Positions 20,447-24,851 of a DNA stretch of 42,531 bases are shown here, one piece after another. The position numbers were made by a program, and so were the translations under genes. The stretch's first letter is position 1, and every line of letters begins with the position of its first letter. The notes beneath the pieces were generated by a model that was given only the letters and a program-made list of their open reading frames with translations, was not told the origin of the DNA and searched no databases. Source of the stretch: Salisapilia sapeloensis CBS 127946 (taxonomy: Eukaryota; Protista; Oomycota); the NCBI GenBank assembly GCA_023334545.1, contig JAADVB010000167.1, positions 1-42,531 on the forward strand. The letters run 5' to 3'.

Positions 20447-21260
20447 AGCTTCCAATAAAGAATTTAGCCAACTTTCTACATCAATATTCGTTTTATAGTG
20501 TTTGTATGATCGAAAATAAAGATTTGTGTCGAGTATGTTTGTAAATTGTGGTTAAATTCTTTTTGTCTTGTGATAGTCGCTTGTTGGTGTCTGGTTCTTG
20601 GAAGTTTTAGATGGCAAGTACTATCTCTTGTATGCATTGATACGGAATCTTTGCTTTGCTTGACGAGATAGTAGATAGTGTTAGGTACCTACGCATAAGT
20701 CAAAGAAGGGATATAACAAGATAGAAAGGTATAAATGTCTTGAGATTGACCGAGGTGACTGGAGTAGCTTGGAGACTTGTATCGTAGGAACGCGTTGATG
20801 CTGATTTCTTATAAAAGTGTATCTATGATCGTATGCATGCTAAAATGATATTGCTTTCAATGATGCTGTTCTCCACATAACCTCAGCTTTAGAAAAGGAA
20901 AAAAGACATAAACTGAAAGACTAAAGCAGAACATTTTCAAGTAGCTAGTACTACATGCAAGAAATACTCGCAGCATAGGTTATCCGACGACTTCTTATCT
21001 ACATTACGTATAGCAGGCACCAACATACTAGGAACAAGAGCAGAGGATGTGCAAGGTAGGTCGCTGATATTGAAAAAGAGAGGTTTTAATGTACATTGTG
21101 TACATCAGTCTTCTTACCCGTTTTCCAACGTAACTTGGTACGGCCACGACCACGTCGGTACGCTACTTGATCGCCAGCACGAAGATTGTGCATTTATACC
21201 AAGCCTCTCGTACAACTCTGCCCTCTCTTTCCTCTCCTCCATTAAGCTCCCTACTGCTTA

Positions 21261-22367
21261 ATGACCACTGCAACAGACACATCGATGGAGAGCGTCAGTC
21301 TCGATGACGCTCCTTCCTTTTTAGAAAATGGAGGTGCTTTCGACACGCCCACGTCCTCCGACCATCCGGATAAACTCGAGACTGAGCTCTCATCGAGTGA
21401 AACAGTCGAAAGCGATGATAACGACGATTTCGTTGTGACCGTGGAAGATGAGAGTGAACCTTTAAAGACGCTACCACGTCTCCAAGTTCCTGACGAGGAC
21501 GAGATGCATTGGCAAGATGAAACGGATGCAGAGGTTGGTGGTGAAAAGGACTATGTCGACACGAGGCTCTTCAGTCCCGAAATGTCACGACATAGCTTAG
21601 AAGTAGCTCATCGTCGAGCAAAAGCCCTGGCGGTGGAAATTAAGGAAGAGCAGTACGATGAAGAGGAAAACGGATCTAACACGAACGTCTTGCAAAAGCT
21701 CCTCCCCTCTACGCAAGTGAAATCGAGCTTGAGCTCGTCCGTCTCGAAATTAAAGCATATTGTCGCGAAGGGCGAGCGGGAGTACGACCTCGTTGCCGGG
21801 ACGTCTCCTGGTGCTCGTGTGGAAGACATCGATGGCGACGGTCTTCAACTATCCCCAGAAGAAGGCTCTTCCTTCGTTTCGACCCCAAAGATCCGTCCAG
21901 CGTTGAAACGTATCTCCAAGTACTCGCATTTGGATTCGGAGTCGGAAAAAGAAAAGAAAGGAAAGAGTTTAAAATGGGAAGAAGACGAGATCGAAGTGAG
22001 TGAAAGTGATGCTTTTCTCGATGATCCGAGTGACGAATCGTCTGAGTCGAGTGTCTTGAATTATCGCAATGGCAGTCCAACGTCGACGTCTCAAGTTCCT
22101 CGACGGAAAAGTATGAAAAATAAGAAGAAAGGGATTCGACGCCTAAGTCCCAAGGAAAAGGAAGAGCTGTATAAACTCCGTCCGGATCTACAGATTACAC
22201 CGAATTGGGCACAAAAGTATCGAGAAGAGATGGGTGATATGGTGCGACCGACGCGTTGGAGTCTCTGGTTGCTCTTGCTCATTGCAGTCCTCACGGCGTT
22301 ACTCGTAACGCTCATCGTTCTCATCGCACGAGCGCATGCCGTAGCGGAAGTACACCCGGCGATTTAA
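21261..22367 (+). CDS. Acidic, disordered hypothetical protein with a single C-terminal TM helix (tail-anchored candidate)
   Basis: 368-aa single ORF, D/E/S-rich, with a basic cluster RRKSMKNKKK and hydrophobic LWLLLLIAVLTALLVTLIVLIA ending about 12 aa from the C-terminus. Confidence 0.75.
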   Translation: MTTATDTSMESVSLDDAPSFLENGGAFDTPTSSDHPDKLETELSSSETVESDDNDDFVVTVEDESEPLKTLPRLQVPDEDEMHWQDETDAEVGGEKDYVDTRLFSPEMSRHSLEVAHRRAKALAVEIKEEQYDEEENGSNTNVLQKLLPSTQVKSSLSSSVSKLKHIVAKGEREYDLVAGTSPGARVEDIDGDGLQLSPEEGSSFVSTPKIRPALKRISKYSHLDSESEKEKKGKSLKWEEDEIEVSESDAFLDDPSDESSESSVLNYRNGSPTSTSQVPRRKSMKNKKKGIRRLSPKEKEELYKLRPDLQITPNWAQKYREEMGDMVRPTRWSLWLLLLIAVLTALLVTLIVLIARAHAVAEVHPAI

Positions 22368-22507
22368 CTCGAAATGTAGGCAATTTTTCTCATTTTATGT
22401 CTTTGGAGAGCCTCGATCGAATGGAAAGAGGTGGGTAGGATCGAAACTGATGGCAGTAGCATTTGTATTCTCGACCGATTAGATGTCAATGGACCACCGA
22501 AAGGCAT

Positions 22508-22822
22508 TTAGTGGTACGGGTCGACGTCACCGTACGTTTCAATGACGATCGGGGCTTCTTCAAACTGGTGCATCGGAGGAGGCGACGGCAAGCAGAACTC
22601 CAACGACAGTTCAATGCGCGGGATGACCAGCTCCGAGTCTTCCGGCTGCTCATAGTCCGGTCCCATGTTCAGCGCGAACGAACGGGATTGACCAGCGGCA
22701 CGGGCGACAGGAACGTTCGGGACTGCACATGCAGCGTTAGATGAGGTAGGAGAGAAGGTTGTGACTGTAATAGTTGACGTACCGGCCTTGAGGGCGCGGA
22801 GAGATTGACGTAGCAGGCTCAT
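22508..22822 (-). CDS. Nucleus-encoded C-terminal fragment of cytochrome c oxidase subunit 1 (Cox1-c) with mitochondrial presequence
   Basis: The presequence MSLLRQSLRALKA... leads to SLEFCLPSPPPMHQFEEAP (22606-22550), which matches the Cox1 C-terminal motif LEW..xPPPxHxFEE. A probable 60-nt in-frame intron 22723-22782 (GTACGT, CTAAC, CAG) gives 84 aa. Confidence 0.75.
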   Translation of the reverse strand: MSLLRQSLRALKAGTSTITVTTFSPTSSNAACAVPNVPVARAAGQSRSFALNMGPDYEQPEDSELVIPRIELSLEFCLPSPPPMHQFEEAPIVIETYGDVDPYH

Positions 22823-23087
22823 CTTCTAGCGACGATAAAAGGCGAATTGTGACCACAGACAGGTATTACAAAGTCACATAGAAATGTAAATATAACTTAT
22901 AAATCGGAACAGCCGTGTATTAATTAGCTCTTTCCAGGACATTCCACCTCTGTTCATGCAACTTTGTGGATCAAACTATGAGACGAGTATCAACAGGTCC
23001 AGTAAAAATACTGTAAAGAGGGTTGTTAAATTGCAACTGCTTTGTGGCGCTGAGAAAGCTTGCATTAAAGACAAAAGCACGAGCAAA

Positions 23088-23417
23088 ATGGCGGAAGGAA
23101 AACCAGTGAAGTGGCACCGTATGGGCTTCAGCAACTTTGTCAAGCACGAGGCGAACCGCCCGATGTTCCGCCCCTTCCTCATTGGCGCCGCGTACGTTTC
23201 AATGGCTTTCATACGCCTTGTATCGAGTACTTACTTTAGTGATTATGCAGCGCCACTTGGTTCATCTGTGGTGTCCTCCCGACGATGGGCGCTGACGGTA
23301 TGAATTTGCAACTAGTATATACGTGCATTCGATATTCATCGTATTATAGACGAATCCAAGGAACAGAGCAACTTCTGGAAGCGTACGCACGGCAAGTTCG
23401 ACTACCTGCACCATTAG
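23088..23417 (+). CDS. Small single-TM mitochondrial protein, probably ATP synthase subunit i/j (Atp18 / plant 6-kDa subunit-like), 72 aa
   Basis: Introns 23192-23250 and 23298-23349 give MAEGKPVKWHRMGFSNFVKHEANRPMFRPFLIGAAATWFICGVLPTMGADDESKEQSNFWKRTHGKFDYLHH. The F..E..R..PFL.G.A.T...S.F..H pattern recalls the plant 6-kDa and yeast Atp18 subunits. Confidence 0.55.
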
Positions 23418-23481
23418 GTTGTCCACTAGGTCGACTCAGAATCAGAACGGAAAGAAAAGAATTCGACCATCAATTACGTTC

Positions 23482-24851
23482 TTATCTTTTCAACGATTCT
23501 TTCATGAGCTTGATGTCCGCCAAGTCATCGTTCAGCACCGTCGTCAGAGCTTCCAGTCCCTGTCGTTGCTTCTCCAAAAACTATATATCATTTAGTATGC
23601 TATCGTGATACAACTGCAGTCGATAGAGCATACTTCGTAAATGCGTTGCTGCTGGTCCGAATTGAGTGCCGGTGGCTCCGAGGAAGGCGCTTCTTCCTCG
23701 GACTGTTGCTTTGCCACGGCTTGGTTCAATCGAGCCTTGTATTGATCTGGCGCATCCAAGAGCGTCTGCAATTTCTTTAGCGCGGATCTATTTTCTTTCT
23801 TAGTAGTGGTACAGTAGTGGTATAGTGTACCCATCATACGCTAGGTTGACTTCATCCTGTTGTAGAGGTTTGCCGAGATGCTGTAGAAACTCGATATCCT
23901 TCATAATCTAATACAATACATAAGTTGACATCCAATACAAAAATGATATGAACGTACCTTGATAAGGTGATGAACGAGTTGTGTGTGCTCATGTCGACAC
24001 CGTTCGAGCTTCTCGTCACTAGCTCGGCTCTTTTTATCCATCTCGGCCAACTGCTCTTTCAAGTCATTCGTGAATTTGTCGTACTGACCAGCAAATTCCT
24101 GCTGCTTTCCAACTCGTTTCAGCAGTTGCTCTAGACCGACCACTGGCGTCGGTGCAAACGTGTTCGGATCGGGGTTATCCACTTCTGCTTGATCCCACTG
24201 GACTTCACTTATATGCGCTGGCCGGGTGTATAAATGCCTTTGAGATGGCTCGACTGGATTGTACAGGAGGAACTTAAATCGAGACTGAGTAGGGTCCTGA
24301 TACGCAAATTTAATCGCGTTCAATTGAGAGATCGACGCATCTGCGTTCGGGACGACAGGCGTTGGACCTTGAGGTGCAGCGTTTGCATTTTGTGGGTTCT
24401 GTCCAAAAGTATTCGTCGGTGTGGTGCCGAAACCGCCAAAGCCAGAGTTCGTATTCGCCTGCTGGTTGGTTGCTCCAAAGGATGAGCCTTGGTTACCGAA
24501 GCCAAAGCCACCAGTGGATGATGCTTGGGTATTAAAACCACCAGACGAAGGCGTCTGGGTGTTAAAACCAAAGCCACCAGTGGTACTCGTCGCTGGTTTT
24601 GCCCCACCAAAGCTAAAACCACCACTAGACGCTGGCGCTGTAGACGTGCTAGAGTTGAAGGAAAAGCCTGTGTTGGTGTTTGATGTCGCTGTGTTGCCAC
24701 CGAAAGAGAAATTGGAAGTAGTGGTGGACGCCGCTGGTTGGCTCGTAGCTCCAAAGCTAAAGCCTGTCGATTGTGTTGCTGGCTGGGAAGTGGCACCAAA
24801 GGAGAATCCTCCAGTCTGCGGCTGTTGCTGTTGCTGTGGAGCGCCAAACAT
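23482..24851 (-). CDS. NUP54: FG-repeat nucleoporin Nup54
   Basis: N-terminal GFSFG/GGFGF repeats, RFKFLLYN, WDQAEVDNPDP and PTPVVGLEQLLKR. Three introns extend the coiled-coil C-terminus (LDAPDQYKARLN; FLEKQRQGLEALTTVLNDDLADI) to TAA at 23482. Confidence 0.9.

What the first reader, a model, noticed from the sequence alone, without database searches (positions are those of the whole stretch)
22508..22822. Split cox1: nucleus-encoded Cox1 C-terminal peptide with its own import signal
Seen: an 84-aa (spliced) protein whose only conserved-looking part, LEFCLPSPPPMHQFEEAP, aligns with the extreme C-terminus of mitochondrial Cox1 (human NLEWLYGCPPPYHTFEEP, from memory), behind an Arg-rich presequence. 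Established: a nuclear Cox1-c complementing a truncated mitochondrial cox1 was described in Acanthamoeba and some other protist lineages, including stramenopiles and alveolates (Gawryluk and Gray). Such genes are tiny and often left as hypothetical. Note the Trp-to-Phe change at the LEW position.
Basis: partly seen in the sequence, partly recalled or inferred. Interest (0 to 1): 0.7.

Follow-up and report, generated by a model that had tools for sequence, protein, structure and literature searches.

The report
Nuclear gene for Cox1's tail
This small, expressed nuclear gene of an oomycete-like organism encodes the last stretch of cytochrome oxidase subunit 1, which these organisms make separately and import into mitochondria; this gene split was described in 2010, so the find is real but ordinary.

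Summary
A two-exon gene lies on the minus strand at 22822..22508. Its 60-nt GT-AG intron is removed in an RNA assembly, giving an 84-aa protein. The block LEFCLPSPPPMHQFEE is homologous to the extreme C-terminal tail of cytochrome c oxidase subunit 1. A profile of the family hits only Cox1 tails at the top of the PDB search (best E 1.6e-4). Profile-profile comparison with full-length Cox1 tails gives 98% probability, E 4e-14.

More than 150 small relatives exist in oomycetes, diatoms, brown algae and Tribonema. Nearly all are labelled hypothetical, and Pfam has no model for them. The intron sits at the same codon and phase in Plasmopara and in another oomycete.

All 120 mitochondrial Cox1 proteins nearest to an oomycete query, including named Phytophthora species, stop just after helix 12 and lack the motif. 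This organism's own mtDNA is not in the assembly, so its cox1 could not be read.

This is Cox1-c, the nuclear half of the cox1 fission of Gawryluk and Gray (2010), which already listed Phytophthora and Thalassiosira. The Trp-to-Phe change recurs in 18 of 118 family members. The scan has no earlier follow-up of this gene. Already known; low interest.

The parts
22783..22822 (-). Exon 1 (40 nt): start codon and the first 13 codons plus one base. It forms the start of the presequence (MSLLRQSLRALKA).
   Evidence: Sequence. The RNA contig in X2 runs 22783-22859 and is joined to 22722. Exon 1 has the same length and phase in Plasmopara and in locus L124.
22723..22782 (-). Spliceosomal intron: 60 nt, GT..AG, phase 1, stop-free and a multiple of three.
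   Evidence: The joint '22722 to 22783 skips 60, CT..AC' appears in RNA run X2 and not in DNA run X1. A contig of X3 keeps the intron. Homologues lack the 20 residues it would add.
22508..22722 (-). Exon 2: rest of the presequence, acidic linker, Cox1-tail core, short conserved C-terminal end, and the stop codon at 22508-22510.
   Evidence: ORF; RNA contigs cover it; homologues found.
22676..22722 (-). Second part of the predicted mitochondrial presequence (..PNVPVARAAGQSRSF). It has a possible processing site of the R-x-F|A type.
   Evidence: No acidic residue occurs before residue 22 of the exon-2 peptide, and two more Arg lie before it. An aligned ARF|S-type site is present in the orthologues. 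The cleavage site is inferred, not tested.
22526..22621 (-). Core homologous to the C-terminal tail of full-length Cox1 (PRIELSLEFCLPSPPPMHQFEEAPIVIETYGD).
   Evidence: hhalign aligned residues 34-65 of the exon-2 peptide to Cox1 tails with E 4e-14. PDB profile hits cover R. sphaeroides 533-555, Vigna 494-524 and bovine 477-508.
22568..22585 (-). SPPPMH, the SPPPxH signature of Cox1-c and the Cox1 tail, with the conserved His.
   Evidence: P47, P48, P49 and H51 are invariant in 41 family members. The review names SPPPXH as the cox1-c consensus.

Best explanation
This is the nuclear gene cox1-c of an oomycete-like stramenopile. In this lineage the mitochondrial cox1 gene ends right after transmembrane helix 12. 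The roughly 30-40 hydrophilic, matrix-side residues that end Cox1 in animals, plants, fungi and bacteria are encoded separately in the nucleus. The transcript is spliced (shown) and translated in the cytosol into an 84-aa precursor. An acid-free, Arg/Lys-rich amphipathic presequence of about 30 residues takes the precursor into the matrix, where it is probably cut off (inferred). The mature peptide of about 55 residues then binds the truncated, mitochondrion-made Cox1 in trans, at the place where the covalent tail sits in other organisms. There it supplies the LE[W/F]..SPPPxH segment, whose His lies near the entrance of the D proton pathway (inferred from homology and from the literature; not tested here).
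For: Gene model and expression: an RNA contig removes exactly 22723-22782, and several RNA runs cover the gene.

Homology to the Cox1 tail: the PDB profile search puts Cox1 chains in the first 24 places, all on the C-terminal tail, best E 1.6e-4. hhalign against full-length Cox1 tails gives probability 98.2%, E 4e-14.

Family: 156 small proteins with an invariant LE.., PPP.HQF.E.P..E core occur in oomycetes, diatoms, brown algae and Tribonema.

Old nuclear gene: the intron has the same position and phase in Plasmopara halstedii and in a second oomycete.

Complementary truncation: 0 of 120 oomycete-type mitochondrial Cox1 proteins carry the motif. They end 245-252 residues after GHPEV, against 277-290 in full-length Cox1 from the same scan. 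Phytophthora cactorum and P. nicotianae each have both the truncated Cox1 and the small protein.

Other points: the gene is single copy. A nuclear Cox11 gene shows that the organism builds complex IV. The presequence features are present. The literature describes the cox1-c transfer in Phytophthora and Thalassiosira with the SPPPXH consensus (PMC5664110).
Against: This organism's own mitochondrial cox1 could not be read, because the assembly holds no cox1, cox3 or cob; the truncation is inferred from relatives. No targeting predictor, proteomics or structure was available, so import, cleavage and docking are inferred. The one complex prediction gave no answer. One RNA contig keeps the intron, so a 104-aa isoform cannot be excluded. 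Pfam gives no hit, because its COX1 model does not reach the tail and no Cox1-c model exists. The window's protein sits on a long branch among oomycete orthologues.
Confidence: 0.93

Rival explanations
1. The gene descends from cox1-c but no longer serves as the structural tail of Cox1. It could be an assembly factor or a redundant copy beside a full-length mitochondrial Cox1 in this particular organism.
For: The organism's own mitochondrial cox1 was not seen. The window's protein is on a long branch, 1.4 against a median of 0.13. It has Phe for the otherwise invariant oomycete Trp and Pro for Ser before PPP.
Against: All invariant family positions are kept. All 120 related mitochondrial Cox1 proteins are truncated. 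No eukaryote is reported with both a nuclear cox1-c and an intact tail in mtDNA.
Confidence: 0.04
2. The real product is the 104-aa intron-retaining form. The intron would be coding sequence, or both forms would be made.
For: The 60-nt intron is stop-free and in frame. A contig of run X3 covers 21200-22812 without a gap. A gene caller read through the equivalent intron in another oomycete (P0017).
Against: A contig in X2 is spliced at canonical GT..AG. Orthologues lack the 20 residues and continue ..RALKA-V.. across the junction. The X3 contig also spans the convergent neighbour gene, so it may come from precursor RNA, read-through or DNA.
Confidence: 0.02
3. The match is a chance motif in an unrelated small protein, or a dead fragment of mitochondrial DNA in the nucleus.
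For: A single-sequence search against the PDB gives only E = 2, and Pfam gives nothing.
Against: Profile statistics are significant. The gene is conserved across stramenopile classes. It has a spliceosomal intron at a conserved position, it is expressed and spliced, and it has an added presequence.
Confidence: 0.01

Closest known systems
Cox1-c of Phytophthora and Thalassiosira (stramenopiles), from Gawryluk and Gray 2010, Mol Biol Evol 27:7, as summarised in PMC5664110
   Same: It is a small nucleus-encoded protein carrying the SPPPxH end of Cox1, partnered by a mitochondrial cox1 that lacks that end. The window's protein is 50-56% identical to the Phytophthora, Plasmopara and Pythium proteins, and the intron sits at the same site.
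   Different: It is a divergent orthologue on a long branch, with Phe for Trp in LEW and Pro for Ser before PPP. The 2010 paper itself was not held, so identity with its listed sequences is inferred from taxon, size and motif.
Acanthamoeba castellanii Cox1-c and Dictyostelium 'CoxIV' (Amoebozoa), the founding cases
   Same: The same kind of gene fission and transfer, with the same motif according to the review.
   Different: Different supergroup. No sequence from these species was compared here.
C-terminal tail of full-length Cox1 (Rhodobacter sphaeroides 1M56 residues 533-555, Paracoccus 1AR1 525-546, Vigna 7JRO 494-524, bovine 1OCC 477-508)
   Same: Colinear homologous segment LEW..SPPPxH.F.E.P.
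   Different: There it is covalently part of the 12-helix subunit made inside the organelle or cell. Here it is a separate imported polypeptide with a presequence, and it has HQF where the full-length tails have HTF.
Split cox2 (cox2a/cox2b) of chlorophycean algae and of apicomplexans and dinoflagellates
   Same: A mitochondrial respiratory subunit gene is broken in two, the hydrophilic part moves to the nucleus, and the protein is reassembled from two polypeptides.
   Different: Different subunit. In some of those lineages both halves are nuclear.

Membership tests
Cox1-c (nucleus-encoded C-terminal fragment of cytochrome c oxidase subunit 1) | SPPPxH consensus with the conserved His | tested here: met
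   SPPPMH is encoded at 22585..22568. P47, P48, P49 and H51 are invariant in 41 members. The consensus is named in PMC5664110.
Cox1-c (nucleus-encoded C-terminal fragment of cytochrome c oxidase subunit 1) | Significant, colinear homology to the tail of full-length Cox1 after helix 12 | tested here: met
   In the PDB profile search the first 24 hits are all Cox1 tails, best E 1.6e-4. hhalign gives probability 98.2%, E 4e-14.
Cox1-c (nucleus-encoded C-terminal fragment of cytochrome c oxidase subunit 1) | Encoded in the nucleus and expressed | tested here: met
   A GT..AG intron is removed in an RNA contig. The gene lies in a 42-kb nuclear contig among intron-bearing genes. The intron position is shared with Plasmopara.
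Cox1-c (nucleus-encoded C-terminal fragment of cytochrome c oxidase subunit 1) | N-terminal mitochondrial targeting presequence | tested here: inconclusive
   Composition fits: 35 acid-free residues, 5 Arg/Lys, and an amphipathic first 13 residues (moment 0.76, reached by 2.4% of shuffles). Most orthologues show the same pattern. No dedicated predictor and no localisation data were available.
Cox1-c (nucleus-encoded C-terminal fragment of cytochrome c oxidase subunit 1) | The same organism's mitochondrial cox1 lacks the corresponding region | not testable with these tools
In relatives the feature is met: 0 of 120 oomycete-type Cox1 proteins, including named Phytophthora, carry the motif.
Cox1-c (nucleus-encoded C-terminal fragment of cytochrome c oxidase subunit 1) | Physically part of complex IV | not testable with these tools
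   This needs proteomics or a structure. The complex prediction with Phytophthora Cox1 gave no answer.
Pfam COX1 (PF00115) | Match to the family model above its cut-off | tested here: not met
   No Pfam hit even at E = 10. This is expected, because the peptide carries none of the membrane helices that the model describes. It is a fragment homologue of Cox1, not a PF00115 member.

The most novel reading that the evidence does not exclude
The stop-free, in-frame 60-nt intron may be a regulated switch rather than an accident. Its position is conserved among oomycetes, another species also has an in-frame, stop-free intron there, and one of the RNA assemblies here retains it. Retention would make a 104-aa precursor with a 20-residue Ser/Thr-rich insert in the presequence. 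That would give two import forms of the Cox1 tail and a way to tune complex IV assembly from the nucleus.
Probability: 0.06. Interest if true: 0.35.

Novelty: already known. Interest (0 to 1): 0.15.

Why it matters
The main value is for annotation. The gene completes this organism's set of complex IV core parts. It also shows that a whole stramenopile family of more than 150 database proteins is still labelled hypothetical, that one member is mislabelled as a phosphoribosyldiphosphate synthetase, and that Pfam has no model for it. A profile built from alignment A2 would label them all. Biologically it is one more instance of the old cox1 fission, in which only the hydrophilic end of a very hydrophobic subunit moved to the nucleus. 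It adds nothing new in principle.

Tried and rejected
Pfam scans of the ORF, of exon 2 and of four homologues found no meaningful hit.

The single-sequence PDB search was not significant (E = 2), though it pointed to the right place.

The complex prediction paired Phytophthora Cox1 (492 aa) with the mature part of the window's peptide. It scored 0.00 with the verdict 'no answer'. The alignments supplied were not used, and this is no evidence either way.

An exact look-up of eight window ORFs in the protein collection, meant to name the organism, found none on record.

Gawryluk and Gray 2010 is not held. A search for 'cox1-c' mostly returned unrelated gene-order strings. Papers that cite the 2010 paper added no detail.

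Searches of the organism's own assembly for mitochondrial cox1, cox3 and cob found nothing, so the mtDNA was not assembled.

The large HMMER search of protein representatives was not run. After the protein was no longer open, and the claim does not rest on absence of relatives.

Exon 2 and the unspliced ORF were used by reference instead.

The idea that Trp-to-Phe is special was rejected: the family has W 99, F 18, Y 1 at that position.

Full report
**What is there.** On the minus strand, 22822..22508, the ORF listing gives a 104-aa ORF that contains the quoted LEFCLPSPPPMHQFEEAP. Read directly, the ORF holds a 60-nt GT..AG intron (22782..22723) that is stop-free and in frame. Laying public runs on 21200-24200 showed that runs X2-X4 are RNA, because their contigs carry seven canonical intron joints that the DNA run X1 lacks. 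One X2 contig skips exactly 22723-22782. An X3 contig runs unbroken from 21200 to 22812, so an intron-retaining molecule, or precursor or read-through RNA, also exists. The gene is single copy in the 22.4-Mb assembly.

**Relatives.** A word search with the exon-2 part found two small proteins, one of them Plasmopara halstedii PHALS_04184 (87 aa). A profile of the three sequences then found 156 proteins of 52-153 aa. They come from Phytophthora, Peronospora, Hyaloperonospora, Peronosclerospora, Pythium, Globisporangium, Lagenidium, Albugo and Aphanomyces. Others come from diatoms (130-150 aa, with a long C-terminal extension), brown algae (about 80 aa) and Tribonema. Almost all are 'hypothetical'; three JGI entries are auto-named 'heme/copper-type oxidase subunit 1'. 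In a 41-sequence alignment the invariant columns are L, E, PPP, H, Q, F, E, P and E of the block LE[W]xL[S]SPPPxHQFxExPxxxE. The orthologues run ..RALKA-V.. straight across the window's exon junction and lack the 20 intron-encoded residues. In Plasmopara, exon 1 is also 40 nt and is followed by a 92-nt GT..AG intron in the same phase. In a second oomycete (L124) the equivalent intron is also stop-free and was read through by the gene caller, giving P0017. This is therefore an old nuclear gene and not a recent organelle-DNA insert.

**Is it the Cox1 tail?** Pfam gives nothing. The window's peptide alone hits Paracoccus Cox1 residues 529-547 at only E = 2. The family profile changes that. Against 177,635 distinct PDB sequences, its first 24 hits are all cytochrome c oxidase subunit 1 chains. 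Each is aligned on the segment after helix 12:
- Rhodobacter sphaeroides 533-555, E 1.6e-4
- Vigna radiata 494-524, E 1.2e-3
- Paracoccus, E 3e-3
- bovine 477-508, E 4.8e-3
- human, E 8e-3

As an independent test I collected cox1 loci from metagenome contigs with a degenerate pattern for the WFFGHPE site and aligned 22 tails of full-length Cox1. hhalign of the family against these tails gives probability 98.2% and E 4e-14 over 32 columns, covering PRIELSLEFCLPSPPPMHQFEEAPIVIETYGD of the window.

**Is the mitochondrial gene truncated?** The assembly contains no cox1, cox3 or cob, so the mtDNA was not assembled and this organism's own cox1 cannot be read. The metagenome loci fall into two classes. 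In 41 loci Cox1 continues 277-290 residues past GHPEV and carries LEW..PPxH. In 19 loci it stops 245-262 residues past GHPEV, right after helix 12, without the motif. One truncated locus, L017 (24% G+C), is an oomycete cox1. Its 120 best relatives include named Cox1 proteins of more than a dozen Phytophthora species at 91% identity, all 492-497 aa, and none of the 120 carries the motif. P. cactorum and P. nicotianae appear in both lists, with truncated Cox1 and with the small protein. The window's protein falls inside the oomycete group in a tree, but on a long branch and with weak support. Earlier notes on this genome also call it oomycete-like. The genome has a nuclear Cox11, so complex IV is made.

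**How it most likely works.**
- Shown: the gene is nuclear, spliced, expressed, conserved and homologous to the Cox1 tail, and its relatives' mitochondrial Cox1 lacks that tail.
- Inferred: the first ~30 of the 35 acid-free residues, with five Arg/Lys and an amphipathic start, act as a matrix-targeting presequence. A site of the type R-x-F|A, aligned with ARF|S in the orthologues, would be cleaved.
- Inferred: the mature peptide of about 55 residues docks on the matrix face of the truncated Cox1, where the covalent tail lies in other oxidases.
- From the literature: the review states that the conserved His of SPPPXH is proposed to control proton entry. From my memory of the R. sphaeroides literature, the aligned His549 is one of the surface histidines near the D-pathway entrance.
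- Not informative: a complex prediction with Phytophthora Cox1 gave no answer.

**Comparison with what is known.** This is the cox1 fission of Gawryluk and Gray (2010). The review PMC5664110 lists Phytophthora and Thalassiosira among the taxa with mitochondrial cox1(-) and nuclear cox1-c. It gives about 25 residues and SPPPXH as the hallmark. The window's gene is an orthologue of that protein in one more oomycete-like species.

Its particular features are small. It has Phe for Trp in LEW, the only such case among the oomycete sequences seen, but Phe is present in 18 of 118 family members, all diatom-type sequences with the long C-terminal extension. It has Pro for Ser before PPP, which Paracoccus also has. 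It evolves faster than its orthologues.

**Verdict.** The finding is already known, and its value lies in annotation.

Noticed in passing
window 22823-23420 (+ strand gene, ATG at 23088): The head-to-head neighbour is a three-exon gene (23088-23191, 23251-23296, 23349-23417 including the stop) for a small protein of about 72 aa with one hydrophobic stretch. An RNA contig also shows a GT..AG joint that skips 22860-22934. That suggests a 5'-UTR intron and a transcript start within about 40 nt of the Cox1-c start codon, so the two divergent transcripts abut or overlap rather than share a 265-bp promoter.
   Followed up: partly
P0003 (Phytophthora cinnamomi, 87 aa): This clear Cox1-c orthologue is named 'Phosphoribosyldiphosphate synthetase' in NCBI and UniRef. 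That is very likely a misannotation.
   Followed up: no
P0032-P0119, the diatom members, about residues 75-145: Diatom Cox1-c proteins carry a well-conserved extension of about 75 residues after the Cox1-tail core (..DHLDL.PG.EVE..L..QG...TD..GKE.W..ND...Y.GLIPQN..WTEF.DE.TGEW.Y.DE.G..). It has no meaningful Pfam match. It may be an extra lineage-specific complex IV module.
   Followed up: partly
L124:2501-2824 (Logan contig of another oomycete), protein P0017: The equivalent intron there is also stop-free and in frame, and the gene caller read it through, giving 107 aa instead of about 83. Two species with in-frame, stop-free introns at this site may be chance, or may hint at tolerated retention.
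   Followed up: partly
L001-L120 (metagenome cox1 loci): Among 120 cox1 loci caught by one degenerate pattern, 41 keep the full tail and 19 end right after helix 12. Split cox1 is therefore common in environmental mitochondrial contigs. L118 has cox2 immediately upstream of a truncated cox1.
   Followed up: partly
window 22508-22720, compared with orthologues: The window's Cox1-c sits on a terminal branch of 1.4 changes per site, against a median of 0.13 for other oomycetes. Only Albugo is similar. The protein evolves fast in this small-genome organism.
   Followed up: partly
window 21261-22812: The convergent upstream gene (21261-22367, + strand) and Cox1-c are covered by single RNA contigs in three runs. 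Their 3' ends lie within 140 nt of each other and the transcripts may overlap tail to tail.
   Followed up: no
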